Below, in pieces: positions 3,722-46,000 of a DNA stretch of 64,000 nucleotides (the first letter of the stretch is position 1; every line of letters starts with the position of its first letter). The stretch spans positions 16,802,001 through 16,866,000 of the forward strand of contig NC_091285.1 in NCBI RefSeq assembly GCF_032444005.1. Reading direction: 5' to 3'. Position numbers and translations under genes: made by a program. The DNA is from Ranitomeya imitator. Taxonomy: Eukaryota. The notes under the pieces are model-generated. The model ran no database searches. It was not told where the DNA came from and saw only the letters and a list, made by a program, of their open reading frames with translations.

Positions 3722-3846
3722 TTTTAATGTGTGTGCAGGATCTGTTTGCCTATAGGCTTTGTGGGGGCTTATACCTCATATAGGGGGCAATGTGAGGGTT
3801 CATGCTGTATATAGAGGGGCTATGTGAGGGGACTGTATGGGGCGTC
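3722..3846 (+). repeat. 125-bp duplicate of 32940-33064
   Basis: Direct comparison shows near identity (one substitution seen). Confidence 0.9.
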
Positions 3847-5545
3847 CATTATGTACGGTAGCGCCCCCTGCTGGCGACTCGGGGTGGTGACTCCAATCAC
3901 ACCATTATGTACGGCAGAGTCCCCTGCTGGCGCCTCGTGTTGGCGACTCCAATCACACCATTATGTACGGCAGAGCCCCCTGCTGGCGCCTCGGGGTGGG
4001 GACTCCCATCACACCATTATATACAGCAGCGCCCCCTGCTGGAGCCTCGGGGTGGTGACTCCGATCACACCATTATGGACAGCAGCGCCCCCTGCTGGCA
4101 CCTCGGGGTGGTGACTCCGATCACACCATTATGTACAGCAGCGCCCCCTGCTGGAGCCTCGGGGTGGTGACTCCGATCACACCATTATGGACAGCAGCGC
4201 CCCCTGCTGGCACCTCGGGGTGGTGACTCCGATCACACCATTATGTACGGCAGCGCCCCCTGCTGGAGCCTCAGGGTGGTGACTCCTATTACACCATTAT
4301 GTACAGCAGTGCCCCCTGCTGGCGCCTCGGGGTGGTGACTCCTATCACACCATTATGTACAGCAGCGCCCCCTGCTGGAGCCTCGGGGTGGTGACTCCTA
4401 TCACACTATTATGTACAGCAGCGCCCCCTGCTGGCGCCTCGGGGTTGTGACTCTGATCACACCATTATGTACAGCAGGGCCCCCTGCTGGCGCCTCGGGG
4501 TGGTAACTCCTATCACACCATTGTGTACAGCAGTGCCCCCTGCTGGCGCCTGGGGGTGGTGACTCCTATCACACCATTATGGACAGCAGCGCCCCCTGCT
4601 GGCGCCTCGGGGTGGTGACTCCGATCACACCATTATGTACGGCAGTGCCCCCTGCTGGCGCCTCGGGGTGGTGACTCCTATCACACCATTATGGACAGCA
4701 GCGCCCCCTGCTGGCGCCTCGGGGTGGTGACTCCGATCACACCATTATGTACGGCAGCGCCCTCTGATGGCCCCTCGGGGTGGTGACTCCGATCACACCA
4801 TTATGTACAGCAGCGCTCCCTGCTGGCGCCTCGGGGTGGTGACTCCGATCACACCATTATGTACGGCAGCGCCCTCTGATGGCCCCTCGGGGTGGTGACT
4901 CCGATCACACCATTATGTACAGCAGCGCTCCCTGCTGGCGCCTCGGGGTGGTGACTCCGATCACACCATTATGTACAGCAGCGCCCTCTGATGGCCCCTC
5001 GGGGTGGTGACTCCGATCACACCATTATGTACAGCAGCGCTCCCTGCTGGCGCCTCGGGGTGGTGACTCCGATCACACCATTATGTACGGCAGCGCCCTC
5101 TGATGGCCCCTCGGGGTGGTGACTCCGATCACACCATTATGTACAGCAGCGCTCCCTGCTGGCGCCTCGGGGTGGTGACTCCGATCACACCATTATGTAC
5201 GGCAGCGCCCTCTGATGGCCCCTCGGGGTGGTGACTCCGATCACACCATTATGTACAGCAGCGCTCCCTGCTGGCGCCTCGGGGTGGTGACTCCGATCAC
5301 ACCATTATGGACGGCAGTGCCCCCTGCTGGTGCCTCGGGGTGGTGACTCCGATCACACCATTATGTACAGCAGCGCCCCCTGCTGGAGCCTCGGGGTGGT
5401 GACTCCGATCACACCATTATGTATGGCAGCGCCCCCTGCTGGCACCTCGGGGTGGTGACTCCGATCACACCATTATGTACAGCAGCGCCCCCTCCTGGCA
5501 CCTCGGGGTGGTGACTACGATCACACCATTATGTACAGCAGCGTC
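3847..5545. repeat. 56-bp minisatellite, about 30 units, CTCF-motif bearing
   Basis: Unit CCCCCTGCTGGCGCCTCGGGGTGGTGACTCCGATCACACCATTATGTACAGCAGCG. Minus strand reads CCAGCAGGGGGCGC. Confidence 0.95.
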
Positions 5546-5800
5546 AGCATTGCTTTATTAATCCAGTAGTATAAAAGGCACGAAAAATGGTTGTACACAA
5601 CAGCACAAAAACTGACTTGACGAAGGACCCTGAAGGTCTGAAACATGTTCCTTGCGAGCGCAGCGAATATTTCTTTTCTGCTTTTTTTATTTTTGTGCTG
5701 TTGTGTTCAACTATTTTATTTGTGCCTTTTATACTACCGGATCAATAAAGAAATTGGTTTAAGAAGATGTAAGTGCCGGCTATCATTTCGACTGCTGCTT
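5546..5800 (+). mobile_element. Possible Penelope-like terminal-repeat remnant
   Basis: TTGACGA-A-GGACC/GGTCT-GAAACATGT hammerhead-like core followed by T-rich sequence and AATAAA. No coding evidence. Confidence 0.3.
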
Positions 5801-19059: not shown

Positions 19060-19983
19060 TGTTGTGAATTCTGTGGTCGAGCTCCCTCCTGTGGTCACAA
19101 GTGGTACTTCGGCTGATTCTGTCTATGAGCTTCCGTTGGTGGATGTGAGTGGTACTGCGGCTTCTAAGTTTCCTTCCTCAGGTGATGTGGTGAAGTCGTT
19201 AGGTGCTGCTCTATTTAACTCCACCTAGTGCTTTGCTCATGGCCTCCAGTCAATGTTCTAGTGTGGATCTTGCTCTCTCCTGGATCGTTCCTGTGGCCTG
19301 TCTTTCCTGCATAAGCTAAGTTTTGCTGGTGTTACTTTTGTTGCTATATTTTCTGTCCAGCTTGCGATATTGGTTTTTCTTGCTTGCTGGAAGCTCTGGG
19401 ACGCAGAGGGGGTACCTCCGTACCGTTAGTCGGTGCGGAGGGTCTTTTTGCACCCCCTGCGTGGTTGTTTGTAGGGTTTTGTGTTGACCGCAAAGCAATC
19501 TTTCCTATCTTCGGTCTGTTCAGTCAGTCGGGCCTCACTTTGCTAAAATCTATTTAATCTCTGTGTTTGTACTTTCATCTCAACTCACAGTCATTATATG
19601 TGGGGGGCTGCCTTTTCCTTTGGGGAATTTCTCTGAGGCAAGGTAGGCTTATTTTTCTCTCTTAGGGCTAGCTAGTTTCTCAGGCTGTGCTCGAGGCGCC
19701 TAGGCCTGGACAGGAGCGCTCCACGGCTACCTCTAGTGTGGTATGATAGGATTAGGGATTGCGGTCAGCAGAGTTCCCACGTCTCAGAGCTCGTCCTTGT
19801 TATTGGTAACTGTCAGGTCACCTTGTGTGTTCTTAACCACTAGACCCATTGTGGTTCTGAATTACCTGTTCATAACAGTACTGGAGGCCCAAAGTACTAA
19901 TGCTTCTCAATAGAGGGAAAAAAGAAGTTCTGAGACCATTTTTTTTTCTTTGCACTGTGTTTTTCCTTTTTTTCCCCCTAGAC

Positions 19984-22900: not shown

Positions 22901-23120
22901 CGAAGACTTAAAGGGCCCACGGGGTGTTTTTTTTCTCCTCCTTCTGCAGCGCCGGCCGCCCCGCCCCCCGCAGTGTGCCGCCCGGGGCGGCCCGCCTTCC
23001 CCCGCACCCCCCTTCCTACGCCACTGGGAAGGTGGATGGGGAGGTGAGAGAGGTGGCGACCCCTGTGTTTTGGTCGTTCGACCCCCCTCGGGGTCGCGAC
23101 CCCCAGGTTGAGAACCGCTG
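19984..23120. mobile_element. Non-autonomous hAT transposon with SPIN/URR1-like ends
   Basis: TIRs CAGTGGTTCTCAACC / GGTTGAGAACCGCTG. 8-bp TSD CCCTAGAC at 19976-19983 and 23121-23128. The homologous site in element B is empty. Confidence 0.9.
21131..22637. repeat. Compound short-unit minisatellite inside the hAT
   Basis: Interleaved units CCAGCAATCTGCCCCAGTGT(GT), CCAGCATTGCCCCAGTGT and CCAGAAATCTGCCCCAGT. Confidence 0.9.
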
Positions 23121-23158
23121 CCCTAGACATTTGGGTGGTTCAGGACACAGGTGTAGTG

Positions 23159-26100
23159 ATGGACATTAAAAGTCTGTCTTCATGTGTGGATCATCTCACT
23201 GCAAGAGTACAAAATATTCAAGACTTTGTGGCTCAGAATTCTATGTTAGAACCAAAAATTCCTATTCCTGATTTGTTTTCTGGAGATAGAGCTAAATTTC
23301 TGAGTTTCAAAAATAATTGTAAACTTTTTCTGGCTTTGAAACCTCGCTCCTCTGGTGACCCAGTTCAACAAGTTAAGATCATTATTTCTTTATTACGTGG
23401 CGACCCTCAAAACTGGGCATTTTCCCTTGCGCCAGGAGATCCTCCATTATGTAATATTGATGCGTTTTTTCTGGCGCTCGGATTGCTGTATGAAGAACCT
23501 AATTCAGTGGATCAGGCAGAGAAAAATTTGTTGGCTCTGTGTCAGGGTCAGGATGAGGTAGAGGTATATTGTCAGAGGTTTAGGAAGTGGTCTGTGCTCA
23601 CTCAGTGGAATGAATGTGCGCTGGCAGCGATTTTCAGAAAGGGTCTCTCTGAAGCCCTTAAAGATGTCATGGTGGGATTTCCTATGCCTGCTGGTTTGAA
23701 TGAGTCTATGTCTTTGGCCATTCAGATCGGTCGACGCTTGCGTGAGCGTAAATCTGTGCACCATTTGGCGGTATTATCCGAGCATAAACCTGAGCCTATG
23801 CAGTGCGATAGGACTTTGACCAGAGCTGAACGGCAAGAACACAGACGTCAGAATGGGCTGTGTTTCTACTGTGGTGATTCCACTCATGCTATCTCCAATT
23901 GTCCTAAGCGCACTAAGCGGTTCGCTAGGTCTGCCACCATTGGTACGGTACAGTCAAAATTTCTTTTGTCTGTTACTTTGATCTGCTCTTTGTCATCTTA
24001 TTCTGTCATGGCATTTGTGGATTCAGGCGCTGCCCTGAATTTGATGGACTTGGAGTTTGCCAGGCGTTGTGGGTTTTTCTTGGAGCCCTTGCAGTGTCCT
24101 ATTCCATTGAGAGGAATTGATGCTACGCCTTTGGCCAAGAATAAGCCTCAGTACTGGACCCAGCTGACCATGTGCATGGCTCCTGCACATCAGGAGGATA
24201 TTCGCTTTCTGGTGTTGCATAATCTGCATGATGTGGTCGTGTTGGGGTTGCCATGGCTACAAGTCCATAACCCAGTATTGGATTGGAAATCAATGTCTGT
24301 GTCCAGCTGGGGTTGTCAGGGGGTACATGGCGATGTCCCATTTCTGTCTATTTCGTCATCCACCCCTTCTGAGGTCCAAGAGTTCTTGTCAGATTACCGG
24401 GATGTATTTAATGAGCCCAAGTCCAATGCCCTACCTCCGCATAGGGATTGTGATTGTGCTATCGATTTGATTCCTGGTAGTAAGTTTCCTAAAGGTCGAC
24501 TGTTTAATTTATCTGTGCCTGAGCACGCCGCTATGCGGAGTTACGTAAAAGAATCCTTGGAGAAGGGTCATATTCGCCCGTCATCATCGCCATTGGGAGC
24601 AGGGTTCTTTTTTGTGGCCAAGAAGGATGGTTCGCTGAGACCTTGTATTGATTACCGCCTTCTAAATAAAATCACGGTCAAATTTCAGTACCCCTTGCCG
24701 CTGCTATCTGATTTGTTTGCTCGGATTAAGGGGGCTAGTTGGTTCACCAAGATAGATCTTCGTGGTGCGTATAATCTTGTGCGTATTAAACGGGGCGATG
24801 AATGGAAAACTGCATTTAATACGCCCGAGGGCCATTTTGAGTACCTGGTTATGCCATTCGGACTTGCCAATGCTCCATCAGTATTTCAGTCCTTTATGCA
24901 TGACATCTTCCGAGAGTACCTAGATAAATTCCTGATTGTATACTTGGATGATATTTTGGTCTTCTCGGATGATTGGGAGTCTCATGTGAAGCAGGTCAGA
25001 ATGGTGTTCCAGGTCCTGCGTGCTAATTCTTTGTTTGTGAAGGGATCAAAGTGTCTCTTTGGTGTTCAGAAGGTTTCATTTTTGGGGTTCATTTTTTCCC
25101 CTTCTACTATCGAGATGGACCCTGTTAAGGTCCAGGCCATTTATGATTGGACTCAGCCGACATCTCTGAAGAGTCTGCAAAAGTTCCTGGGCTTTGCTAA
25201 TTTTTATCGTCGCTTCATCTGTAATTTTTCTAGTATTGCTAAACCATTGACCGATTTGACCAAGAAGGGTGCTGATGTGGTCAATTGGTCTTCTGTTGCT
25301 GTGGAAGCTTTTCAAGAGTTAAAGCATCGTTTTTCTTCTGCCCCTGTGTTGTGTCAACCAGATGTTTCGCTTCCGTTCCAGGTCGAGGTTGATGCTTCTG
25401 AAATTGGAGCGGGGGCTGTTTTGTCGCAAAGAGGTTCTGATTGCTCGGTGATGAAGCCATGCGCCTTCTTTTCCAGGAAGTTTTCGCCTGCTGAGCGAAA
25501 TTATGATGTTGGCAATCGAGAGTTGCTGGCCATGAAGTGGGCATTCGAGGAGTGGCGTCATTGGCTTGAAGGAGCTAAGCATCGCGTGGTGGTCTTGACT
25601 GATCACAAGAACTTGACTTATCTCGAGTCTGCCAAACGGTTGAATCCTAGACAGGCTCGTTGGTCGCTGTTTTTCTCCCGTTTTGACTTTGTGGTTTCGT
25701 ACCTTCCGGGCTCTAAAAATGTGAAGGCGGATGCCCTGTCTAGGAGTTTTGTGCCCGACTCTCCGGGTTTGCCTGAGCCGGCGGGTATTCTCAAAGAGGG
25801 AGTAATTTTGTCTGCCATCTCCCCTGATTTGCGGCGGGTGCTGCAAAAATTTCAGGCTAATAAACCTGATCGTTGCCCAGCGGAGAAACTGTTTGTCCCT
25901 GATAGGTGGACGAATAAAGTTATCTCTGAGGTTCATTGTTCGGTGTTGGCTGGTCATCCTGGAATCTTTGGTACCAGAGATTTAGTGGCTAGATCCTTTT
26001 GGTGGCCGTCTCTGTCGCGGGATGTGCGTTCTTTTGTGCAGTCCTGTGGGATTTGTGCTCGGGCTAAGCCCTGCTGTTCTCGTGCCAGTGGGTTGCTTTT

Positions 26101-27022
26101 GCCCTTTGTTTCTGCTGATCAGGATGATTGGGTGTCCTTTTTGCCGTTGGCTGTGTTCGCCCTTAATAATCCGGCCAGCTCGGCTACCTTGGTTTCGACG
26201 TTTTTCTGCAATTCTGGGTTCCATCCTCGTTTCTCTTCAGGGCAGGTTGAGTCTTCGGACTGTCCTGGTGTGGATACTGTGGTGGACAGGTTGCAGCAGA
26301 TTTGGACTCATGTAGTGGACAATTTGACCTTGTCCCAGGAGAAGGCTCAACGTTTCGCTAATCGCAGACGCTGTGTGGGTCCCCGACTTCGTGTTGGGGA
26401 TTTGGTTTGGTTGTCATCTCGTTATATTCCTATGAAGGTTTCCTCTCCTAAATTTAAGCCTCGTTTCATTGGTCCGTATAGGATTTCTGAGGTTCTTAAT
26501 CCTGTGTCTTTTCGTTTGACCCTTCCAGATTCTTTTTCCATCCATAACGTATTTCATAGGTCATTGTTGCGGAGATACGTGGCACCTATGGTTCCATCTG
26601 TTGATCCTCCTGCCCCGGTTTTGGTGGAGGGGGAGTTGGAGTACATAGTGGAGAAGATTTTGGATTCTCGTGTTTCGAGACGGAAACTCCAGTATCTGGT
26701 TAAGTGGAAGGGTTATGGTCAGGAAGATAATTCCTGGGTCTTTGCCTCTGATGTCCATGCTGCCGATCTTGTTCGTGCCTTTCATATGGCTCATCCTGGT
26801 CGGCTTGGGGGCTCTGGTGAGGGTTCGGTGACCCCTCCTCAAGGGGGGGGTACTGTTGTGAATTCTGTGGTCGAGCTCCCTCCTGTGGTCACAAGTGGTA
26901 CTTCGGCTGATTCTGTCTATGAGCTTCCGTTGGTGGATGTGAGTGGTACTGCGGCTTCTAAGTTTCCTTCCTCAGGTGATGTGGTGAAGTCGTTAGGTGC
27001 TGCTCTATTTAACTCCACCTAG
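23159..27022 (+). CDS. Element C gag-pol ORF, open but lacking the integrase catalytic core
   Basis: Collinear with B. RASGLLLP joins directly to FVSADQDD, an in-frame loss of 122 codons relative to B. Confidence 0.88.
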   Translation: MDIKSLSSCVDHLTARVQNIQDFVAQNSMLEPKIPIPDLFSGDRAKFLSFKNNCKLFLALKPRSSGDPVQQVKIIISLLRGDPQNWAFSLAPGDPPLCNIDAFFLALGLLYEEPNSVDQAEKNLLALCQGQDEVEVYCQRFRKWSVLTQWNECALAAIFRKGLSEALKDVMVGFPMPAGLNESMSLAIQIGRRLRERKSVHHLAVLSEHKPEPMQCDRTLTRAERQEHRRQNGLCFYCGDSTHAISNCPKRTKRFARSATIGTVQSKFLLSVTLICSLSSYSVMAFVDSGAALNLMDLEFARRCGFFLEPLQCPIPLRGIDATPLAKNKPQYWTQLTMCMAPAHQEDIRFLVLHNLHDVVVLGLPWLQVHNPVLDWKSMSVSSWGCQGVHGDVPFLSISSSTPSEVQEFLSDYRDVFNEPKSNALPPHRDCDCAIDLIPGSKFPKGRLFNLSVPEHAAMRSYVKESLEKGHIRPSSSPLGAGFFFVAKKDGSLRPCIDYRLLNKITVKFQYPLPLLSDLFARIKGASWFTKIDLRGAYNLVRIKRGDEWKTAFNTPEGHFEYLVMPFGLANAPSVFQSFMHDIFREYLDKFLIVYLDDILVFSDDWESHVKQVRMVFQVLRANSLFVKGSKCLFGVQKVSFLGFIFSPSTIEMDPVKVQAIYDWTQPTSLKSLQKFLGFANFYRRFICNFSSIAKPLTDLTKKGADVVNWSSVAVEAFQELKHRFSSAPVLCQPDVSLPFQVEVDASEIGAGAVLSQRGSDCSVMKPCAFFSRKFSPAERNYDVGNRELLAMKWAFEEWRHWLEGAKHRVVVLTDHKNLTYLESAKRLNPRQARWSLFFSRFDFVVSYLPGSKNVKADALSRSFVPDSPGLPEPAGILKEGVILSAISPDLRRVLQKFQANKPDRCPAEKLFVPDRWTNKVISEVHCSVLAGHPGIFGTRDLVARSFWWPSLSRDVRSFVQSCGICARAKPCCSRASGLLLPFVSADQDDWVSFLPLAVFALNNPASSATLVSTFFCNSGFHPRFSSGQVESSDCPGVDTVVDRLQQIWTHVVDNLTLSQEKAQRFANRRRCVGPRLRVGDLVWLSSRYIPMKVSSPKFKPRFIGPYRISEVLNPVSFRLTLPDSFSIHNVFHRSLLRRYVAPMVPSVDPPAPVLVEGELEYIVEKILDSRVSRRKLQYLVKWKGYGQEDNSWVFASDVHAADLVRAFHMAHPGRLGGSGEGSVTPPQGGGTVVNSVVELPPVVTSGTSADSVYELPLVDVSGTAASKFPSSGDVVKSLGAALFNST

Positions 27023-27677
27023 TGCTTTGCTCATGGCCTCCAGTCAATGTTCTAGTGTGGATCTTGCTCTCTCCTGGATCGTTCCTGTGGCCTGTCTTTC
27101 CTGCATAAGCTAAGTTTTGCTGGTGTTACTTTTGTTGCTATATTTTCTGTCCAGCTTGCGATATTGGTTTTTCTTGCTTGCTGGAAGCTCTGGGACGCAG
27201 AGGGGGTACCTCCGTACCGTTAGTCGGTGCGGAGGGTCTTTTTGCACCCCCTGCGTGGTTGTTTGTAGGGTTTTGTGTTGACCGCAAAGCAATCTTTCCT
27301 ATCTTCGGTCTATTCAGTCAGTCGGGCCTCACTTTGCTAAAATCTATTTCATCTCTGTGTTTGTACTTTCATCTCAACTCACAGTCATTATATGTGGGGG
27401 GCTGCCTTTTCCTTTGGGGAATTTCTCTGAGGCAAGGTAGGCTTATTTTTCTCTCTTAGGGCTAGCTAGTTTCTCAGGCTGTGCTCGAGGCGCCTAGGCC
27501 TGGACAGGAGCGCTCCACGGCTACCTCTAATGTGGTATGATAGGATTAGGGATTGCGGTCAGCAGAGTTCCCACGTCTCAGAGTTTGTCCTTGTTATTGG
27601 TAACTGTCAGGTCACCTTGTGTGTTCTTAACCACTAGACCCATTGTGGTTCTGAATTACCTGTTCATAACAATGGAG

Positions 27678-29812
27678 GCTCTCTGTAAGAGAATGCAGGT
27701 GAAGCACCTGGTATCGAGTGCGTATCACCCACAGACCAATGGCTTGTGTGAACGCTTCAATGGTACCCTCAAACAAATGCTACGCATGCTGGTTGAGACC
27801 CAAGGGCGCGACTGGGAGCGGTACCTCCCACACCTGCTATTTGCTTACCGAGAGGTTCCGCAGGCCTCGACGGGGTTCTCCCCCTTCGAGCTCCTGTACG
27901 TGAGGCGAGTCCGGGGACCCCTTGGGTTGGTAAGAGAATCCTAGGAAGAGGAGCCGAACCCTTCTGAAGTGTCCATAGTGGAGTATGTCATGCGCTTCCG
28001 TGACAAGATGCAGACCTTGACGCAGTTGGTGCATGACATGGCGCAGGCTCAGGCTGACCAGAAGCACTGGTACGACCAGAACGCCCGGGAGCAGACCTAC
28101 CACGTGGGTCAAAAGGTGTGGGTGCTGGTCCCCGTACCAAAGGATAACCTTCAGGCAGCCTGGGAGGGCCCGTACGTCGTCCACCAAGAGCTCAACCCGG
28201 TCACCTATGTGGTCATGCTTGACCACGCTCGGGGTAGGCGAAAGGCCTTTCACGTCAACATGATGAAGGCTCATCACGAACGTGAACCTTTCGTCCTACC
28301 GGTCTGCAGCTTACCCGAAGACAGGGAGGAAGACACCCTCCTGGACATGCTGGCCCAAGCCAAGGCCGGTGGGTCCATCGAAGATGTGGAGGTAAGCGCC
28401 TCGTTAACTGAACCCCAGCGGTTGCATTTGCAAACCACACTGGAACCCTTCCGGGTCATGTTCTCCAACAGACCTGGGAGGACTGATTTATTAGTCCACG
28501 AGGTGGACACCGGGAATCACGCCCCACTACGGCGAACACCCCATCGAATCTCCGACCAGGTGCAGCAGGTTATGTGCGAGGAGATCGATGAGATGTTACA
28601 GCTGGGGGTGATTTGACGGTCAAAGAGCGCGTGGGCCTCACCTGTAGTTCTCGTGCCAAAGAAGGACCGGACAACCCGGTTCTGCGTGGACTACAGGGGG
28701 CTCAACGCCATCACAGCCTCTGACGCGCTCCCAATGCCACGCATTGAGGAGCTGCTTGAGAGGTTAGCTGGCACAAAATACCTGACAATAATGGATCTGA
28801 GTCGAGGATACTGGCAGATTCCCCTGAGCCCCGAGGCGCAGGAGAAGTCCGCCTTTATCACACCCTTTGGACTGTACGAGTCCACGGTCATGCCCCTGCC
28901 ACTTTCCAGCGGATGGTTAACCTCCTGCTTCAGGGACTGGAGAAGTACGCAGTGGCGTACTTGGATGACATTGCCATCTTCAGTCCCTCCTGGGAGGAAC
29001 ACCTGCAGCATCTCGAGGAGGTGCTCAGGCGAATTCACCAAGCAGGACTGACTATCAAGCCCGGAAAGTGCCAGATGGGCATGAGGGAGGTCCACTACCT
29101 GGGGCACTGGGTAGGCAGAGGCACCCTAAAGCCCGAGCCTGAGAAAGTGGGCGCGATCGTGAACTGGCCCACTCCCGGGACCAAGAAACAAGTGATGTCC
29201 TTCCTGGGCACTGCAGGGTACTATAGGCGCTTCGTACAGCACTATAGTAGCCTGGCAAAACCCTTGACTGACCTCACCAGGAAGAAGCTACCCCACATCG
29301 TCAACTGGACCGATGGCTGTGAGGGGGCCTTCCAGGCATTGAAAACAGCACTGTGCAACGCCCCTGTGTTGAAAGCAGTCGACAGCAGTCGACCGTTCTT
29401 GGTGCAGACCGACGCCAGCGAGTTTGGCCTTGGTGCTGTGCTCAGCCAGGTTGACCCGGAGGACCAAGAGCACTCCGTGTTATACCTGAGCCGGAAACTT
29501 TTGCCGAGGGAAGTGGCCTACTCCACCATCGAGAAGAAGTGCCTGGCCATAGTCTGGGCCCTGCAGCGCTCTCAGCCCTACTTGTACGGTCGCACCTTCA
29601 CCGTGGTGACCGACCACAACCCTCTGCGCTGGCTAAACGCCATGTGTGGAACCAATGGCAGGTTGCTACTCTGGAGCCTTGCCCTTCAGCAGTTTGACTT
29701 CACCATTGAACACAAAACAGGCAGGGAGCATGGAAATGCAGATGGGCTGTCCTGCCAGGGTGAACCTACTGAGGTGCGCATGGAGGCATACCGAGGGGTT
29801 CTACCTCCGTAG
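27678..29812 (+). pseudogene. Element A integrase C-terminus, RT and RNase H, broken by stops and a frameshift
   Basis: YHPQTNGLCERFNGTLK, then FCVDYRGLN, YWQIPL, YLDD, FLGTAGYYRRF, VQTDAS and VTDHNPL. IN precedes RT. Confidence 0.9.
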
Positions 29813-29832: not shown

Positions 29833-31254
29833 TGTCACGATATTGTATGAAATATAATATGATGTTGTAGCTTTGTCCTTCAGCCCATGCTGGGGGCTAA
29901 AACTGCCCTTCTCTCTCTGGCTCTCTTTGTTTCTCTGTGTGCTTCGGAATGTATGGTAGAAGGGGGTTTTATTGCCCGGGCCATAAATTCCAGGCTCGAA
30001 GAAAGTTACTCGCCCCCCTCCCAACTGCACCAGCAGAAACTGGTATAGAAGCTTCCAGAATCCATGAGAGTCTTTGTTCTATTATTGTAAGATATTGGGC
30101 TAACGATTTAGGCTAGAAAAAGGAAAATACCTACTCTTAACGTCCCTCGGCGGATTGGTCAACCGCTGTAAACACGAGCTTCTAACTCCATCAGGTAAAA
30201 AGTAGGGATTTCTCTGTAATTATGCATCACAAATAGGACATATTTGATCTCATTAGAATGCCAATGTTAATACGAGATGAATGCTGGGTTTGTTATGACT
30301 ATGACATGTTCTGTAGCGGAGATACAGGCATTAGACAAACTTGTGTTAAATCTAGTAAGACTGAAGAGGTAGGACGGACTGGGTAAACCAACCCCTTTTA
30401 GTGATGTCACCAGGCTGAGCTATAAGTGTTATACCAGACCCCAGCAGGGAGTCTGTCTGCTGGAGCCTATGTGAGGCTGACTTGAAGAGCTGTTCCTAAC
30501 CAGTGTCCTGATGCACTGGGACAGATGGAAACACCACTAGCCTGGTTGCCCCACATGATCTGAACACATGTAAGTGTTATTTCTCATTTAACCCCTGTTA
30601 TTTTTATAATTACCTTGTACATATTTTCAATTGTCTCATATTGTAACACCATTATATAACTTTTTATAAACACTGCCTTCTTTCGGAGTAAAAATATATA
30701 AATTACTAGTTTTCTTTCTTCCTGCTCTAAAACGTGCCCTATGTCTCCTGAAGGGAATTACGCTGTTTTGGGTTAGCTTCGGACCCGTTTAATCGAAGTT
30801 GGTGGCAGCATACATTTGTGCAGGCCTTTGGGTGTCGTAGCGGCTGCGGCGTTGATAATTATTGTTCCTGCCTGAGTGGGAGGAGTTTATCGCGTCACTG
30901 CAGCGTGCCCAATAGCCAGTACATAGCAGGCAGCCTTTCTGGCGACTAATTACCCCCGGTGCAGTACCTAATCTGACCTGAAAGGGGGGCGCCAGAGAGC
31001 TGCAAGTTTTAAGTGGAACTGTAAGCGGGATATACATAAATCCCTGCAGCTCATGGTATATTGAAGAGCAGTGGGATACCTAGAATAAGCCCCTGCTGTA
31101 AACTAAGAGGTCAATAGCCTTGTGCGTGTTTTTTTCATCGCATTGTGGAGGGATAATTAAGATAAGCCCCCCTGCACATGTGATAGCCGTCTGTTGGCCT
31201 AAAGTCACCCCGACCCGTGACGTGGGGGTGACGGTCACGGAGTGAATCGTGACA
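29833..31254 (+). repeat. 3' LTR of element A
   Basis: Follows PPT AAAAGGGGGAGG; matches the 5' LTR with an extra segment at about 30962-31197. Confidence 0.93.
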
Positions 31255-32939: not shown

Positions 32940-33629
32940 TTTTAATGTGTGTGCAGGATCTGTTTGCCTATAGGCTTTGTGGGGGCTTATACCTCATATA
33001 GGGGGCAATGTGAGGGTTCATGCTGTATATAGAGGGGCTATGTGAGGGGACTGTCTGGGGCGTCTATGTGATGTCTTATAGTATATACAGGGGGCCTTAT
33101 ACTGTATATAGAGGACTCCTACTGTATACAGGGAGGCCGTGAGGGCTCATACTTTATATAGGAGCAATGTGTGTGGGCTCATACTATAAATAGGGGGTTC
33201 TGTGTGGAAGCTCATGCTGTATATAGGGGGATATAGGATTGTTCATACTGTAAATAAGGGGCTATGTGCGTGTCATACTATATATAGGGGGCTGTGTGTG
33301 GGATACTGTGTTATAGGGGTGTAGTGTGGGTACATACTGTATAAAGAGGGATTGTGTGTGGGGGCTTTCACAATATTTAGGGGGTACTGTGTGTGGACAC
33401 ATACTGTATATAGGGGGCAGCATACTTAATATTACATGATATAATAATTATATGCTAATGAGGGACATCCAGTGCAGTGACCCCGGTAGCGGCCGGCTGT
33501 GTGAGGCACGAGGTCTGCGCAGGTTTCGCATAATCAGTAACATTTCTATTCACTGACAACAAGCAGAGATCCTGACAACTGAGGATGCTACAGATCCGTT
33601 TATTACAAATATGAAACGTTATTCTCTCC

Positions 33630-35396
33630 TCAGCTGAAGAAAATCTCCCGGACGTATTTTAGGGGGTCGTCGTCCGGGTCGTCAGAGTCATTACATGATG
33701 GCGGCTTAGTCCGCGGTTTCTCGGATCCGGCGGCAGTCGGAGGCGTCTCCTCACGGCCGGCAGAGGGGGAGGCCGCCTCGTTTTTGCTCTTCTCCTCTTC
33801 TCTCTGTACTTTACTCTAGAAGGAGAAATGATAAAAGCCTCACAGCAGGAACAATATTGGGGGTTGTAGTAGGTGTGAAATTGCTTGAGAAAACCTCAAT
33901 GCCTACAATCAGGCAGAGACCATGTGGGATGATGCGCCCCCTGCTGGAGCCTCGGGGTGGTGACTCCGATCACACCATTATGTACGGCAGCGCCCCCTGC
34001 TGGAGCCTCGGGGTGGTGGCTCCGATCACACCATTATGTACAGCAGCGCCCCCTGCTGGCACCTCGGGGTGGTGACTCCGATCACACCATTATGTACGGC
34101 AGCGCCCCCTGCTGGCGCCTCGGGGTGGTGACTCCGATCACACCATTATGTACGGCAGCGCCCCCTGCTGGAGCCTCGGGGTGGTGACTCCGATCACACC
34201 ATTATGTACAGCAGCGCCCTCTGCTGGAGCCTCGGGGTGGTGACTCCGATCACACCATTATGTACGGCAGCGCCCCCTGCTGGAGCCTCGGGGTGGCGGC
34301 TCCGATCACACCATTATGTACGGCAGCGCCCCCTGCTGGAGCCTCGGGGTGGCGACTCCGATCACACCATTATGTACGGCAGCGCCCCCTGCTGGAGCCT
34401 CGGGGTGGCGACTCCGATCACACCATTATGTACGGCAGCGCCCCCTGCTGGAGCCTCGGGGTGGCGACTCCGATCACACCATTATGTACGGCAGCGCCCC
34501 CTGCTGGAGCCTCGGGGTGGCGACTTCGATCACACCATTATGTACGGCAGCGCCCCCTGCTGGAGCCTCGGGGTGGTGACTCCGATCACACCATTATGTA
34601 CAGCAGGGCCCCATGCTGGAGCTTCGGGGTGGTGACTCCGATCACACCATTATGTACGGCAGCGCCCCCTGCTGGCGCCTCGGGGTGGTGACTCCGATCA
34701 CACCATTATGTACGGCAGCGCCCCCTGCTGGAGCCTCGGGGTGGTGACTCCGATCACACCATTATGTACGGCAGCGCCCCCTGCTGGAGCCTCGGGGTGG
34801 TGACTCCGATCACACCATTATGTACAGCAGCGCCCTCTGCTGGAGCCTCGGGGTGGTGACTCCGATCACACCATTATGTACGGCAGCGCCCCCTGCTGGA
34901 GCCTCGGGGTGGTGACTCCGATCACACCATTATGTACGGCAGCGCCCCCTGCTGGAGCCTCGGGGTGGTGACTCCGTTCACACCATTATGTACGGCAGCG
35001 CCCCCTGCTGGAGCCTCGGGGTGGTGACTCCGATCACACCATTATGTACAGCAGCGCCCTCCAGTGGCTCGGACCCCTCGCGGCGCAGTACCTGGCTCAG
35101 CACCTCCAGGGCGCACTCCACCAGCTCCCGCTCATTCATACAATACACCGTCCTCTTCCTGGAAGAAACCGAACTAAAACAGAAATAAAAAGCAAAGTCA
35201 GAACAGCAGCGGCAGAGGCCCCTGCAGCCACTAACACTGGAGGGTCCGTGTAACTACAGTCAGAGACCCCCATATCTCACACTTGTGTCTTCCTCCTCCG
35301 CGGTTCTGCGCTGTGCGGCTTTTTGGGCGCGGAGTTATCATCTGTCATCCAGGAGGGGAGCAGCCGCCTCTTCACTGCGGAGCCAGCGGCGTCCAT
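33630..35396 (-). CDS. CYREN: CYREN/MRI, cell cycle regulator of NHEJ; 3 coding exons, 122 aa
   Basis: Exons 35396-35281, 35158-35092 and 33815-33630 with GT-AG sites and matching phases. Motifs KRRLLPSWM (Ku-binding), RTVYCMNERELVECAL and PLKYVREIFFS-stop (XLF-like). AATAAA at 33599-33604. Adjacent to WDR91 as in human. Confidence 0.92.
33934..35060. repeat. 56-bp CTCF-motif minisatellite, about 20 units, in CYREN intron 2
   Basis: Same unit and orientation as 3847-5545. Confidence 0.95.
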
Positions 35397-36051
35397 GTCA
35401 CTAACAGACGACTGTTATTAATGCCTCGCCCACAACAATGGCGGCCACAGCGCCCATCACTAAAGTGCCCCCATAATACAGTGCCCCCATAATAACTACA
35501 GCACCGCCATCACTACAGTGCCCCCATAATAATTACAGTGCCCCCATAATGGTTACAGTGCCTCCATAATTACTGCACCCTCGTAACTACAGCACTCAAT
35601 TACAGCGCTCCTAACTACTGCACCCCATAATTACAGCGCCCCATAACAATTCTAGCACCCCCATCTTAAAGCCCCCAAAATTACAGCATCCACCTCCATC
35701 ATTACCACAGCGCTCCATAATTAGAGCCCCCCTATTATAAGCACAGCACCCCATCTTAATCCCACTGCTCCAGTCACAGCGCCCCCATCAGGTCCCCAGC
35801 CCCCTCCCATCACCGCCATGTACCTGTAATTAACCAGTTCGCTGCCTCATACTTATGTTTCCACAGGTTAGTGAGCGCGCACAGGGTGAGTCAGTGCAGG
35901 ACCCGCAGCCTCACAGCTGAAGCCCCTCATGCTCACACCCGGATCGGGCGACTTCCTCAATTTAGCAAGAACTACATTCCCCAAACTGCAGCGCGCTACC
36001 AGCCGGAAGGCGGCACCAGTACATTATTACATCCGCAGTAACCACGAGTGA

Positions 36052-36136
36052 CCGCTAGATGGCGCTGCTGCACTAGGAACTTATGAAAGGATCTATTATC
36101 CACTGCGCAGCACGTCTATTTACCACCAGGTGGCGC
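36052..36136 (+). promoter_or_regulatory. Two CTCF consensus sites (36052-36065, 36123-36136)
   Basis: CCGCTAGATGGCGC and CCACCAGGTGGCGC fit CCRSYAGRKGGCRS. The first has an upstream GCAGTAACC resembling the ZF9-11 upstream motif. Confidence 0.6.
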
Positions 36137-40000: not shown

Positions 40001-43000
40001 TCAGCATGTAGTTTCCTTCCGAGTCGAAAGCGAAGAGTCGTCCGCGAGGAAACTGCACCTGTTTGTAGCCCGAGTAGCCGGACAGCATGAAGGGCCCCGT
40101 GGCGTCAGGAGGCAGCGAGTACTCCGACACTTTCTGGCCGCTCTTGTGAATGTTCCACTGAATAAACTGGAGAGAAAAAAAAATGTTATTCCCCGACTTC
40201 AGGAAGTGGAAACAGTCAGCAAGCTGGTGAAGCCAGGGACACTTGGCGATCAGCGGGGACATTGTTCAGATGCGTTTATATGTAAAATACAACTCAGCGA
40301 CTCGTCCTCATTAAAAAACAGCGATGCTCGTTTTGTGTATACAGCTCCTGTACAGATCTATGTGTATCCATGGTAACAGACTACAAAGAAACTGTGTAGT
40401 CAGATCCTGCAGTTATAGGGGAGCGCAGGATAGGACTACAACCCCCAGCATGCGCCGCTCACCTTCCCATCCTCTCCGATGCTGTACACAGCGTTCTCAT
40501 CGTAGCAGAAGTCTACAGAGTACACCTCCCCCCGGTGCGCCTCCCAACTCATCGCACACTGGTGCTGCTGCATGTCTGCGGAGCAAAGACACCAACTGTA
40601 CGTCCAGCATGCACAAGGACACGTCACTTAAAAGGGACAGTGCACCCGAGCATGAAAAGGAAAAAACCAAGAAGGACAGCGCCCTCTACTGATGAGAAGG
40701 AAATATAACACCACACACTGCGCCACTTACCAAAGAGCCGAATCACACCGTCAGCGGCACCGGTCACCAGCAGATTGCCATTATGGTTGAATGAGGTGCA
40801 GTTCACAGCGATGGGAACGGGCTCCAGAGAGAACTGCAGCTGTGGAGGGAAAAACGGGGACGTAGTAATGTAATGTGTGTACACAGGGACTGCACCAGCA
40901 GAATAGTGAGTGCAGCTCTGGAGTATAATACAGGATGTAACTCAGGATCAGTAATGTACGTACACAGTGACTGCACCAGCAGAATAGTGAGTGCAGCTCT
41001 GGAGTATAATACAGGAGGTAACTCAGGATCAGTAATGTAATGTATGTACACAGTGACTGCACCAGCAGAATAGTGAGTGCAGCTCTGGGGTATAATACAG
41101 GATGTAACTCAGGATCAGTAATGTAATGTATGTACACAGGGACTGCACCAGCAGAATAGTGAGTGCAGCTCTGGGGTATAATACAGGATGTAACTCAGGA
41201 TCAGTAATGTACGTACACAGTGACTGCACCAGCAGAATAGTGAGTGCAGCTCTGGAGTATAATACAGGAGGTAACTCAGGATCAGTAATGTAATGTATGT
41301 ACACAGTGACTGCACCAGCAGAATAGTGAGTGCAGCTCTGGAGTATAATACAGGAGGTAACTCAGGATCAGTAATGTAATGTATGTACACAGTGACTGCA
41401 CCAGCAGAATAGTGAGTGCAGCTCTGGAGTATAATACAGGAGGTAACTCAGGATCAGTAATGTAATGTATGTACACAGTGACTGCACCAGCAGAATAGTG
41501 AGTGCAGCTCTGGAGTATAATACAGGAGGTAACTCAGGATCAGTAATGTAATGTATGTACACAGACACTGCACCAGCAAAATAGTGAGTGCAGCTCTGGA
41601 GTATAATACAGGAGGTAACTCAGGATCAGTAATGTATGTACACAGTGACTGCACCAGCAGAATAGTGAGTGCAGCTCTGGAGTATAATACAGGATGTAAC
41701 TCAGGATCAGTAATGTAAGTACACAGTGACTGCACCAGCAGAATAGTGAGCGCAGCTCTGGAGTAACACCCTATACCAGGCTTCTTACTTGCTGTTTCAT
41801 GGTCTTGGTGTCCCACAGTAGCAGTCGTCCCGGCACTTGGTTGCCGCCGTTCTCTCCGGTCCCGGGGATGGGAAGCTCTGGGGCCGATGATGGGGCTGCG
41901 GCTGAACACACGAAGGACGTCCCGCTGGGGTTACAGGCCAGTGAGAGGATCCTAGGAGCACAGAGATCCTCGGTGTCACATACCGCACAGGTCGGTGACC
42001 CCGGACCCCCGTAGGGCGGCGCTCACCTCGGCATGTCGTCACAGATCCCGATCTCACAGAGGTTTTTCTTGGCTTCGGTGTCATACAGGCGAACGGTGCC
42101 GACCTCACTGCCCAGCAAGAGCTGCGCTCGGGGAGAAGAACAGAGTGGTGACGTGGGCTCCGCAGGCTCCGAGGGTGCGGGGCCCCTGTACGCCGCCCGT
42201 ACTCACCAGTCGGTCCCGCTTAGTCGCCCACTCCAGGGACAGGAGCGCAGATTTGGATATGGCCGACGCCTTGGTCTGCATGATACCGTCGATGGACCAA
42301 ACCTTGATAACCCCGTCCACGTCCAGGCTGGCGACACGTCGGCCCGAGCAGTCGACCCTGGAAGGCAAGAAAACAGCGGAGTCAGAGCGACCACCCATAA
42401 ACCTCCGTCCACTGCTGACAGTTTGTTACAATGTATCAGGAAGTCCCGAGGACCTGCAGTGCATGATGGAGGAGTGGTGCTCTCCATACTCGTCCTGGCT
42501 GAGCACGATGAACGGCTGCTCCGCTTTCTCCCCTCCTCCGCCCGACGAGACCCCCTTCACCCCTCTCATCAGAGCGTCCACCGGGTCATGCGGGGTCTCG
42601 GGGCGAAGCTCGGACTCAGCGTCTGATGTCTCCGACTTCTTGTCCAGGCTTTGCTGTAAGAGACGACACATCTTCAGGTTTCCTCTCGTGCTGCCCCTAT
42701 TCTCTAGAATGCTCTTTCTAGGCTCAGACTTGCCCAAATTAAAAAAAAAGTCTTAATAGTCCTTCAAAGCCGACCTGTCCACTTCCCTCCCCCCATTTAG
42801 AGTCTCATTCCCTCTTTTCGTAAATGTCTCCTCACCTGTGACTGCGTCTTGGAGAACAGCTCCTTCCTCTCCTGGAGGCGCCGCTGCCTCTGCTGCACCA
42901 TACTGACCTCAGGGACGGCCGGGGCGCCGAGGACACTGGTCACACTCTTCACCTCCTTAGTCACACACAGGGTCTCTTTCGTTTTCTGGGCCTGAAAAAA

Positions 43001-46000
43001 GAAACGTTTAACTGGTATTGTTCTCTGTTATCAGCCATGTCAGGCTACAAAGAGGCCGAGATCACACGGTCCGGACACAAACGGCAAATCAATACCTGAC
43101 TGTTCCCCGGATCTTTCTTCAGGGGAAGACCAGCGGCGCTCTGTGTCGGAGAGGAGATGGCGGCTGGGGGAGGCTTGGGGACTTTCTTGCTCTGTGGCAG
43201 CAAAGAAGAGAGGAACCCGGTGGTCTTCTGGGACTGGACAGCGGATCCGGAGGTCCTCTGACTGGAGATCATGGTACTGCGAATGTGAGCACAACATTAC
43301 GTCACAGCAGCATTATAGCAGTTATATTCTTGTACATAGGAGCAGTATTATAGTAGTTATATTCTTGTACATAGGGGCTGTATTATAGTAGTTATATTCT
43401 TTTACATAGGGGCAGTATTATAGTAGTTATATTCTTGTACATAGGGGCAGTATTATAGTAGTTATATTCTTGTACATAGGGGGCAGTATTATAGTAGTTA
43501 TATTCTTGCACATAGGGGGCAGTATTATAGTAGTTATATTCTTGCACATAGGGGGCAGTATTATAGTAGTTATATTCTTGCACATAGGGGGCAGTATTAT
43601 AGTAGTTATATTCTTGTATATAGGGGCAGTATTATAGTAGTTATATTCTTGCACATAGGGGGCAGTATTATAGTAGTTATATTCTTGTATATAGGGGCAG
43701 TATTATAGCAGTTATATTATTGTACATAGGGGCAGTATTATAGTAGTTATATTCCTGTACATAGGAACAGTATTATAGTAGTTATATTCTTGTACATAGG
43801 AGCAGTATTATAGTAGTTATATTCTTGTACATAGGGGCAGTATTGTAGTTATATTCTTGTACATAGGGGCAGTATTATAGTAGTTATACTCTTGTACATA
43901 GGGGCAGTATTATAGTAGTTATATTCCTGTACATAGGGGCAGTATTATAGTAGTTATATTCTTGTACATAGGGGGCAGTATTATAGTAGTTATATTCTTG
44001 TACATAGGGGGCAGTATTATAGTAGTTATATTCTTATACATAGGAGGCAGTATTATAGTAGTTATATTCTTGTACATAGGAGCAGTATTATAGTAGTTAT
44101 ATTCTTGTACATAGGGGGCAGTATTATAGTAGTTATATTCTTGTACATAGGGGCAGTATTATAGTAGTTATATTCTTGTACATAGGGGCAGTATTATAGC
44201 AGTTATATGTATTGGTGTTGTCCTGATGTCACTCACAGCTCGGAGTCTCCCAGACGATCCATGTTGGAGACGTAGTGCGGCAGCTTATGGTGAACCATAG
44301 GGCCGTCATCCCCCTCTTTTTTCAGCCGGTGCGCCTCTGCCTGAAGAGCAAAGAGCTAAGAAAACAACAGATGTAGTCATGGAAAGAAGAAAATAAAAAT
44401 GTAAAATGGCATTTCCCTCTGGACCCTGACACTCGCCCTTCTTTCGCTCCTCCTCTCCCACCTTCTGTCTCAGCGCCTCGTTCTCCTCTTGTACATGGAA
44501 GATTCTCTGACATTCCGCATCAAAGTTCAGGATAGTTGGGATCGGTGCAGGTTAAAGTTAAAGGAAAACTCCGTCTCCAATAAACTTACATAAATTACAT
44601 TTCTATTTCTAAGATTAAATTCATACAATATGGAACATTCTGTACTGGTTTTACATTAAATTATGTTTTTCTTCTCTAGTCGCCCCAAAACTAAACTGTG
44701 GATTTAACAGGTTCCTTTTACCAAGGTACAAACGGCATTGTGGGAGTCTGATACATTACACATCAAGGCATTCGATGTGCAGACACCGAACAAGCAGGAG
44801 ATCTGCACAATTGTATCCGCAGACACTGAACAAGCAGGAATACTGGGGGATTTGCACAATTGTATCCGCAGACACTGAACAAGCAGGAATAATGAGGGAT
44901 TTACACAATTGTATCCACAGACACTGAACAAGCAGGAATACTGGGGGATTTGCACAATTGTATCCGCAGACACTGAACAAGCAGGAATACTGGGGGATTT
45001 ACACAATTGTATCCGCAGACACCGAACAAGCAGGAATACTGGGGGATTTACACAATTGTATCCACAGACACTGAACAAGCAGGAATACTGAGGGATTTAC
45101 ACAATTGTATCCACAGACACTGAACAAGCAGGAATACTGGGGGATTTACACAATTGTATCCACAGACACTGAACAAGCAGGAATACTGAGGGATTTACAC
45201 AATTGTATCCACAGACACTGAACAAGCTGGAATACTGGGGGATCAATTGTATCCGCAGACACTGAACAAGCAGGAATACTGGGGGATTTACACAATTGTA
45301 TCCGCAGACACTGAACAAGCAGGAATACTGGGGGATTTACACAATTGTATCCACAGACACTGAACAAGCAGGAATACTGAGGGATTTACACAATTGTATC
45401 CACAGACACTGAACAAGCTGGAATACTGGGGGATTTACACAATTGTATCCGCAGACACTGAACAAGCAGGAATACTGGGGGATTTACACAATTGTATCCG
45501 CAGACACTGAACAAGCAGGAATACTGGGGGATTTACACAATTGTTTATTTCGGGAGAGTTTATCTCGCACCCTATATTTTGCTTTCCCAGTAAGGATATG
45601 CATGCACTGGAAGAGGACGCTGAGGAAGTTGTGCAGAGACACGGTGAAGGTGTCTGCCCACTGCCGGGAGAAGTACGTGGAGAAGGTCGGGTTGACATCG
45701 GGCGCAGGAAGAAAAGGAAGCGCGAACCATTCCTTCCATTCGGCCTGGTTCTGCAGCTCCGGCGCCTGCTTCTGGAAGAAGTCGTGCGCTTTGTCCGTCC
45801 GGCTGCTCTGTAATAGAATATTACGTACGGAGGGATTAACAGTTGTACGCCGCTGACACCTAGTGGCCAAAGTGGCGCAACTACAGACAGGTTTAAAAAA
45901 CAAAATCTCACTTTACAGCCTACAGCAAAGTGTCTTAGGAGGATTAAGGAATATGTGTCAGGACCCGTACCTGTATGGTGCACACCAGGTAATAGCGGAA

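What the first reader, a model, noticed from the sequence alone, without database searches (positions are those of the whole stretch)
33934..36136. Minisatellite-built CTCF super-site and divergent boundary around the CYREN 5' end
Most of the ~20 units in CYREN intron 2 carry CCAGCAGGGGGCGC, an exact fit to the CTCF core CCASYAGRKGGCRS, all on the minus strand (pointing towards the TE/TRIM zone). About 1 kb away, two single consensus sites point the other way. Reverse-then-forward is the canonical loop-domain boundary layout. Hypothesis: a copy-number-variable insulator shields CYREN/WDR91/STRA8 from the transposon nest, and its duplicate at 3.8-5.5 kb subdivides the TRIM cluster. Binding is not shown by sequence.
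Basis: partly seen in the sequence, partly recalled or inferred. Interest (0 to 1): 0.72.

Follow-up and report, generated by a model that had tools for sequence, protein, structure and literature searches.

The report
CTCF-motif minisatellite in frog CYREN intron
The last intron of a poison frog's CYREN gene is almost entirely a 20-copy repeat whose units each carry a strong landing motif for the genome-folding protein CTCF, but it looks like an ordinary young repeat expansion in very repeat-prone DNA, and nothing yet shows that it binds CTCF or insulates anything.

Summary
A 56-bp minisatellite (33934-35059, 20.1 units, 96% alike) fills 88% of the last intron of CYREN (minus strand). Its last exon matches Pfam MRI. 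Nineteen of 20 units fit the CTCF core CCASYAGRKGGCRS, 17 of them exactly as quoted, all on the minus strand. Two strong forward motifs lie 1.0-1.1 kb away (36123 exact; 36052 one mismatch). So the reverse-then-forward layout is real.

Function is untested. Tandem repeats cover 23% of the window (38% of its right half). Motif bases vary as much as the rest of the unit. The 30-unit array at 3846-5543 is best read as a young partial copy of the CYREN 3' region: it shares a 125-bp flank at 99.2% and several unit variants, and its junction has a TATGT microhomology. Only 16 of its 30 units still fit the strict core.

The only CpG in the array's core sits at position C12, where methylation does not block CTCF in vitro.

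Earlier notes of this scan report many similar CTCF-motif minisatellites elsewhere in this genome. Verdict: a plausible but unproven CTCF cluster, most likely a by-product of repeat expansion. Modest interest.

The parts
33934..35059 (-). Array B: 56-bp minisatellite, 20 units. Nineteen carry a CTCF core motif on the minus strand, which is the CYREN sense strand.
   Evidence: TRF; pattern matches; recalled-matrix scores 15.5 bits for the left-end unit (33932) and 18.7-21.6 bits for the other 18; unit table
35052..35070 (-). Hybrid edge motif (CCACTGGAGGGCGC, one mismatch) spanning the last array bases and unique intron sequence. Possibly a relic of a founder site.
   Evidence: 16.2 bits; similarity of the flank beyond 35060 to the unit is not above chance
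36049..36067 (+). Forward CTCF-type motif 1 (core 36052-36065, one mismatch to the IUPAC core; it has a CpG at the methylation-sensitive position C2)
   Evidence: 19.8 bits
36120..36138 (+). Forward CTCF-type motif 2 (core 36123-36136, exact fit)
   Evidence: 23.3 bits; outside the arrays, hits of 18 bits or more number 3 against 0.05 expected
35281..35396 (-). CYREN exon with the ATG (MDAAGSAVKRRLLPSWM...); donor GTGAGA at 35280
   Evidence: ORF list; sequence; splice sites read by eye (inference)
35092..35158 (-). CYREN middle exon (...KRTVYCMNERELVECALEVLSQ). Its donor CAG|GTACTG lies 32 nt from the array.
   Evidence: inference for the splice sites
33630..33815 (-). CYREN last coding exon, ending ...DPLKYVREIFFS and the stop codon. 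Its acceptor lies 118 nt from the array.
   Evidence: translation; Pfam PF15325 MRI, 35.1 bits, E 3e-8
3846..5543 (-). Array A: 30 units of the same 56-bp repeat. Sixteen fit the strict core and 13 more have one mismatch. It includes a 112-bp higher-order repeat at about 4757-5274.
3722..3846 (+). Left flank of array A, 99.2% identical to 32940-33064
   Evidence: self-BLAST; alignment
32940..33064 (+). Source copy of that flank, downstream of the CYREN stop codon and 870 bp left of array B
33116..33417 (+). Degenerate repeat of about 30 bp (CATACTGTATATAGGGGG type) between the shared flank and the CYREN last exon
35464..35800 (+). Degenerate repeat of about 20 bp (ACAGTGCCCCCATAATA type) between the ATG exon and the likely promoter
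35971..36009 (+). Promoter-like motifs: ACTACA...TCCCCAAACTGCAGCGCG (ZNF143/SBS-like) and CCGGAAG (ETS-like), 40-80 bp from forward motif 1
   Evidence: sequence; motif identities recalled from memory, not tested

Best explanation
This is a young, CpG-rich 56-bp minisatellite that expanded inside the last intron of CYREN. It occupies 1126 of the intron's 1276 nt, starting 32 nt from the splice donor. The surrounding DNA is exceptionally prone to minisatellites. Each unit happens to carry, or inherited from a resident site, a high-scoring CTCF motif, so expansion produced 19-20 co-oriented motifs at 56-bp spacing. Part of the CYREN 3' region (a downstream flank plus several array units) was later copied about 30 kb away. 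An 870-bp internal deletion at a TATGT microhomology removed the exon, which gave array A; that array has since drifted. The two forward motifs beside the likely CYREN promoter are ordinary single CTCF-type sites. By sequence the array could bind CTCF, and together with the forward sites it could behave as a divergent anchor cluster. It is best seen as a by-product of repeat turnover that may have been co-opted, not as a purpose-built insulator. Shown: the anatomy, the motif strength, the copy relationship and the repeat density. Inferred: the order of events and the lack of selection. Untested: binding, methylation, insulation and length polymorphism.
For: The array and motifs are real and far above chance. 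Gene placement follows. Tandem repeats cover 23.4% of the window and 37.6% of 33-64 kb, in about 15 unrelated unit families. Variant density inside the 14-bp motif does not differ from the rest of the unit (B 1.4% v 2.3%, A 5.7% v 4.4%; Fisher p 0.29-0.88). Arrays A and B share unit variants (C or CA at positions 15-16, A at 53) and a 125-bp flank at 99.2%. The A junction reads ...GGGGCGTC then CATTATGTACGG, where B continues TATGTGATG. No source of the unit was found in the window's transposons, and the unit forms no unusual hairpin. Frog minisatellite expansion in recombination-rich chromosome ends is described in PMC10794172. Earlier notes of this scan report many analogous arrays in this genome.
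Against: The motif matches are very strong (mostly 18.7-21.6 of a possible 26.5 bits; the left-end unit scores 15.5), and 17 units are identical in the core. The array sits exactly opposite two strong forward motifs, a layout typical of domain borders. Concerted evolution would hide selection on the motif, so the lack of a constraint signal is weak evidence. No population or cross-species data could be obtained.
Confidence: 0.6

Rival explanations
1. The array is a working, selected CTCF super-site. With the two forward sites it forms a divergent loop-domain boundary that shields CYREN and the genes beyond it from the transposon and TRIM zone, and repeat length tunes its strength.
For: Twenty co-oriented strong motifs sit opposite two forward motifs. 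Strong single motifs are enriched over shuffles. X. tropicalis is reported to use convergent CTCF motifs, and its TADs to need CTCF and Rad21 (PMC8270788). Tandem CTCF sites are reported to strengthen insulation (PMC7087399). The Dxz4 tandem CTCF array acts in an orientation-dependent way (bioRxiv 10.1101/165340). The core's only CpG is at the methylation-tolerant position C12 (PMC6222495).
Against: The motif shows no more constraint than the rest of the unit. The sister array is decaying, with only 16 of 30 strict fits. The boundary would cut through CYREN itself, with the last exon on one side and the promoter on the other. The array is one of many minisatellites here. There are no binding, methylation or Hi-C data.
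Confidence: 0.2
2. The 56-bp unit belongs to a dispersed, possibly transposon-derived, satellite family spread over the genome. Both arrays are then just two blocks of it, and the CTCF-like motif is a family trait, not a local feature.
For: Two arrays of the same unit lie 30 kb apart. Earlier notes describe a 57-bp CTCF-motif satellite with 100,000 to 800,000 units per genome 4.1 Mb away, and several other 57-bp arrays. Frog minisatellites often derive from transposon parts (PMC10794172).
Against: The two arrays are explained by one segmental copy that shares a unique flank. No unit-like sequence occurs in the window's CR1 or Ty3/gypsy elements. Identity with the 57-bp family could not be checked. 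Searches for array ORFs in public protein collections and for a 29-mer in metagenomes were blank, but those searches are weak tests.
Confidence: 0.15
3. The array is an intragenic CTCF cluster acting on CYREN itself. CTCF bound just downstream of the short middle exon would slow RNA polymerase II and favour inclusion of that exon, or would modulate use of the last exon.
For: The array starts 32 nt after the donor of a 67-nt exon and lies on the sense strand. CTCF-dependent pausing that promotes exon inclusion is known from CD45 (own knowledge, Shukla et al. 2011).
Against: The exon's splice sites look adequate. Twenty sites are not needed for such an effect.
Confidence: 0.05

Closest known systems
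DXZ4 / Dxz4 and similar CTCF-binding tandem arrays (PMC3491370; bioRxiv 10.1101/165340)
   Same: A tandem array carrying many co-oriented CTCF motifs. Array orientation is reported to direct long-range contacts, and copy number is variable.
   Different: DXZ4 units are kilobases long and binding is shown experimentally and is allele-specific. Here the unit is 56 bp, the array is 1.1 kb and intronic, and binding is untested.
Clustered or tandem CTCF sites at domain boundaries (PMC7087399), including divergent CTCF signatures of TAD borders (own knowledge, Gomez-Marin et al. 2015)
   Same: Several same-direction sites next to opposed sites, that is a reverse-then-forward layout.
   Different: Known clusters hold 2 to about 10 separate, individually diverged sites spread over kilobases, and they are often conserved. 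Here the sites are near-identical products of a recent repeat expansion at 56-bp spacing.
Frog minisatellite expansions in recombination-rich extended subtelomeres (PMC10794172)
   Same: Dense, lineage-specific G-rich minisatellites expanded by illegitimate recombination. The window is 23% tandem repeat.
   Different: Those described arise from SINE, CR1 or Kolobok parts. No transposon source was found for this unit, and the chromosomal position of the window is known only from earlier notes.
CTCF-motif-rich human satellites such as gamma satellite and rDNA (bioRxiv 10.64898/2026.07.18.739380)
   Same: Satellite units enriched in CTCF motifs, with partial methylation deciding accessibility.
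   Different: Those are large pericentromeric or acrocentric arrays, not a short intronic minisatellite.
Other CTCF-motif minisatellites noted by this scan in the same genome (s1-307380, s1-288135, s1-312563, s1-307388, s1-294706)
   Same: The same kind of object in the same genome: co-oriented consensus motifs in 26-57-bp units near or inside genes.
   Different: The sequence relation to this 56-bp unit is unknown. This one is notable for filling an intron, for its opposed promoter-side motifs and for a traceable partial copy.

Membership tests
Minisatellite / VNTR | Head-to-tail units of about 10-100 bp forming an array of 0.5 kb or more | tested here: met
   56 bp x 20.1 copies, 96% matches
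Minisatellite / VNTR | Copy number varies between individuals | not testable with these tools
CTCF binding site | Match to the core motif CCASYAGRKGGCRS or a high matrix score | tested here: met
   19 of 20 units fit exactly; 18 of them score 18.7-21.6 bits and the left-end unit 15.5 bits on a matrix recalled from memory
CTCF binding site | Occupancy by CTCF, with cohesin, in vivo | not testable with these tools
   No ChIP, CUT&RUN or read data available
CTCF binding site | Motif conserved at the orthologous position in related species | tested here: inconclusive
   No orthologous locus could be fetched: the exon-3 peptide found nothing by word search or by the HMMER search of representatives
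Divergent CTCF domain boundary | Reverse-oriented site(s) followed by forward-oriented site(s) within a few kb | tested here: met
   The minus-strand array ends at 35059; plus-strand motifs lie at 36049 and 36120
Divergent CTCF domain boundary | Drop in contact frequency across the site (insulation) | not testable with these tools
   No Hi-C or Micro-C data
DXZ4-type CTCF macrosatellite | Kilobase-sized unit with a CTCF site per unit | tested here: not met
   The unit is 56 bp
Dispersed or transposon-derived satellite family | Unit derived from a transposon, or present at many unrelated loci | tested here: inconclusive
   No source in the window's transposons. The two arrays share a unique flank, so they are one lineage. 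The genome-wide count could not be tested.
CYREN / MRI gene (host of the array) | Match to Pfam PF15325 above the curated cut-off, with the C-terminal ...KYVREIFFS end | tested here: met
   35.1 bits against a cut-off of 27, E 3e-8, profile positions 58-100 of 100; translation

The most novel reading that the evidence does not exclude
In this poison-frog lineage, CTCF sites themselves seed minisatellites. A bound CTCF/cohesin anchor is a site of fork stalling or TOP2B breakage (PMC5006368), and it would be repaired by short tandem duplication. Unequal exchange would then amplify it. Resident single sites, such as one just inside the CYREN last intron, would thus grow into arrays, giving a genome-wide natural series of 1 to hundreds of co-oriented CTCF sites whose length tunes boundary strength.
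Probability: 0.12. Interest if true: 0.75.

Novelty: new member of a known kind. Interest (0 to 1): 0.35.

Why it matters
If the array binds CTCF, it would be a compact natural test of how the number of co-oriented sites at fixed 56-bp spacing affects loop anchoring. The decaying sister array 30 kb away would serve as an internal comparison. The array might also link repeat instability to 3D genome evolution in a giant, repeat-rich frog genome. If it does not bind, it shows that consensus-motif counting greatly overstates insulators in minisatellite-rich genomes. It also shows that the motif's CpG position matters when methylation is used as a test.

Tried and rejected
2. Orthologous CYREN loci: the exon-3 peptide gave nothing by word search (the length filter excludes full-length proteins) and nothing at E <= 0.001 in the HMMER search of representatives.
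3. Other copies of the array: exact look-ups of 18 ORFs (14 from the arrays or their edges, 3 from the CYREN exon region and 1 TRIM exon) found none in the collection. A word search with a 44-aa array ORF found nothing. A metagenome scan for a 29-mer of the unit found nothing. These blanks are uninformative for a frog genome.
4. RNA families and tRNAs: no Rfam match anywhere in the window, so the unit is not a known RNA-derived repeat.
5. Hairpin-driven expansion: unit dimers fold no better than shuffles (z 0.1-0.9). Rejected.
6. Founder unit in the intron flank: similarity beyond 35060 equals the shuffle mean. Only the hybrid edge motif remains as a weak hint.
7. CpG-island reading: array B has CpG o/e 0.71 against a window average of 0.58, so it is not a distinct island.
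8. Array A as the original: rejected, because B has the conserved CYREN exon between the flank and the array.
9. WDR91 and STRA8 in the window: Pfam on ten ORFs right of CYREN gave nothing. Not confirmed.
10. Earlier findings searched by sequence or by place near the window: blank.

Full report
OBSERVATION. Tandem Repeats Finder reports a 56-bp array at 33934-35059 (20.1 copies, 96% matches, no indels) and a second array of the same unit at 3846-5543 (30.3 copies, 91%). The IUPAC core CCASYAGRKGGCRS has 36 exact matches in the 64-kb window, against 0.04 expected from dinucleotide shuffles. Nineteen lie in array B, 16 in array A and one at 36123-36136. All array matches are on the minus strand. 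Seventeen units of array B carry exactly CCAGCAGGGGGCGC, two carry CCAGCAGAGGGCGC, and one (34606) has lost the motif. With one mismatch allowed, further hits appear at 36052-36065 (plus strand, CCGCTAGATGGCGC) and at 35054-35067 on the array edge.

It gives 15.5 bits for the left-end unit at 33932 and 18.7-21.6 bits for the other 18 intact units of array B, out of a possible 26.5. The two forward motifs score 19.8 and 23.3 bits. Outside the arrays there are three hits of 18 bits or more, against 0.05 expected from composition-matched shuffles. The single sites are therefore not chance either. The small corrections are that only one of the two forward sites is an exact IUPAC fit, and that array A is much more degenerate than array B.

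GENE CONTEXT. The gene lies on the minus strand. The ORF at 35277-35396 starts MDAAGSAVKRRLLPSWM. The next exon encodes ...KRTVYCMNERELVECALEVLSQ and ends in CAG|GTACTG at 35092/35091. The last exon (33815-33630) ends ...DPLKYVREIFFS followed by the stop codon. That exon matches Pfam PF15325 (MRI, modulator of retrovirus infection, which is CYREN) at 35.1 bits against a cut-off of 27. Splice sites were read by eye.

The last intron runs from 35091 to 33816 (1276 nt). The array takes 1126 nt of it (88%), leaving 32 nt on the donor side and 118 nt on the acceptor side. 'Intron 2' is correct if the ATG exon is the first exon. A non-coding upstream exon is possible (a donor-like CAG|GTACAT lies near 35826) but was not tested.

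The forward motifs lie beside promoter-like motifs at 35971-36009: an ACTACA...TCCC...TGC...GCG element of ZNF143 type and a CCGGAAG element. Both identifications rest on my memory. Left of CYREN lie three Ty3/gypsy copies or fragments, a TRIM RING/B-box/coiled-coil exon (6140-7417, minus strand) and a CR1 reverse transcriptase. The 'TE/TRIM zone' is therefore real. WDR91 and STRA8 were not confirmed in the window.

RELATIONSHIP OF THE TWO ARRAYS. Self-comparison shows that the 125 bp immediately left of array A (3722-3846) are 99.2% identical to 32940-33064. That stretch lies downstream of the CYREN stop codon and 870 bp to the left of array B. The alignment shows identity up to ...GGGGCGTC. 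After that, A continues into a repeat unit (CATTATGTACGG...) while B continues TATGTGATG... Both continuations contain TATGT. The arrays also share unit variants: C or CA at unit positions 15-16, and A at position 53.

In B, the conserved CYREN last exon lies between the flank and the array. The only sensible order of events is therefore that a segment of the CYREN 3' region was copied to 3.7 kb and lost about 870 bp at a microhomology. The copy ends inside the array, 6 bp from a 206-bp foldback (5549-5754). Flank divergence (0.8%) is similar to that of the youngest LTR pair in the window (99.0%), so the copy is recent.

Array A has since acquired a 112-bp higher-order repeat whose two unit types each break the strict core (CCATCAGAGGGCGC and CCAGCAGGGAGCGC). 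Only 16 of its 30 units still fit the core. 'Subdivides the TRIM cluster' is true only as a statement of position: a second TRIM exon fragment lies at 1-342.

PURPOSE OR BY-PRODUCT.
- Tandem repeats cover 23.4% of the window and 37.6% of its right half, in about 15 unrelated unit families. The CTCF-motif array is one minisatellite among many.
- Within units, the 14 motif positions vary as often as the other 42 (Fisher p 0.29-0.88, with all or only distinct units). Concerted evolution makes this a weak test.
- Array B has CpG o/e 0.71 against 0.58 for the whole window, so it is not a distinct CpG island.
- No source of the unit was found in the window's transposons.
- The unit has no unusual single-strand structure.
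- No RNA family matches anywhere in the window.
- Sequence just beyond the array is not significantly unit-like. The hybrid motif CCACTGGAGGGCGC at the array edge is only a weak hint that a resident CTCF-type site seeded the repeat.

WHAT IS KNOWN.
- In Xenopus tropicalis, TAD borders show convergent CTCF motifs, and TADs need CTCF and Rad21 (PMC8270788). Mammalian rules can therefore reasonably be applied to a frog.
- Tandem CTCF sites insulate directionally (PMC7087399), and the Dxz4 tandem array acts in an orientation-dependent way (bioRxiv 10.1101/165340; PMC3491370).
- Frog chromosome ends are rich in lineage-specific minisatellites that are thought to expand by recombination (PMC10794172).
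- A review of the CTCF-DNA structures states that methylation at core position C2 impairs binding, whereas methylation at C12 does not (PMC6222495).
- In the array motif the only core CpG is C12-G13. The forward motif at 36052 also has a CpG at C2. 'Dense methylation of the motif CpG' would therefore not by itself refute binding to the array.
- Whether every 56-bp unit could be occupied at once depends on the CTCF footprint, which I recall as roughly 40-60 bp. That remains an inference.

WHAT COULD NOT BE DONE. This left no data on genome-wide copy number, length polymorphism, transcription or related species. Attempts to reach orthologous loci or other copies through protein collections and metagenomes were all blank. 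For a frog genome these blanks carry no weight.

Earlier notes of this scan are AI notes and I did not check them. They name the genome as the poison frog Ranitomeya imitator. They list many CTCF-motif minisatellites elsewhere in it, including a 57-bp satellite family 4.1 Mb away. So the scan has found this kind of object before on other DNA. Whether the 56-bp unit belongs to that family could not be tested.

VERDICT. The sequence observation is confirmed. The best explanation (confidence about 0.6) is a young intronic minisatellite whose units carry a consensus CTCF motif. It was generated by ordinary repeat turnover in very repeat-prone DNA, and it has one traceable partial copy. CTCF binding is plausible but unproven, and there is no sign of selection for an insulator role. 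A dispersed-satellite origin (about 0.15) and an effect on CYREN splicing (about 0.05) are the other rivals. The kind is known (tandem arrays of CTCF motifs; clustered divergent sites), and this is a new member of it. Interest is modest. The genome-wide recurrence of such arrays is the more interesting question.

Noticed in passing
window 19060-27679: An apparently intact young Ty3/gypsy element: LTRs at 19060-19888 and 26854-27679 are 99.0% identical, and there is a 1304-aa gag-pol ORF (23108-27022). It carries an internal 22/40-bp minisatellite of about 1.5 kb (21125-22635) between the 5' LTR and gag.
   Followed up: partly
window 5549-5754: A 206-bp foldback (arms of 39 and 28 nt, 87-93% complementary) starts 6 bp after the end of array A. 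It could mark the breakpoint of the segmental copy through template switching at a hairpin.
   Followed up: partly
window 33000-64000: Extreme minisatellite density: 37.6% of this half is tandem repeat, with units of 19-86 bp. The same 86-bp unit occurs in opposite orientations at 40864-41765 (+), 57747-58762 (inverted) and 59432-60092 (+).
   Followed up: partly
window 40677-40695 and 45851-45869: Two reverse-strand CTCF-type motifs (17.2 and 19.9 bits) lie 4.6 and 9.7 kb right of the forward pair, so they are convergent with it. Both sit next to unrelated minisatellites.
   Followed up: no
window 35971-36009: A ZNF143/SBS-like motif (ACTACATTCCCCAAACTGCAGCGCG) and an ETS-like CCGGAAG motif lie 40-80 bp from forward CTCF motif 1. 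This suggests the CYREN promoter, and perhaps a non-coding first exon ending near 35826.
   Followed up: no
window 1-342 and 6140-7417: A TRIM RING/B-box/coiled-coil exon (425-aa ORF, minus strand) and an 83% identical fragment of a second copy at the window start. No SPRY exon was found between them.
   Followed up: partly
window 53704-53796: ARAGORN calls a 93-nt tRNA-Lys(TTT) inside a T-rich repeat region. It may be a SINE or a tRNA-derived element and not a working gene.
   Followed up: no
window 8302-9435 and 29833-30962: A 1.1-kb direct repeat at 96.9% identity. The second copy directly follows a Ty3/gypsy RT/RNase H fragment, so it is probably an LTR and unrelated to the arrays.
   Followed up: no
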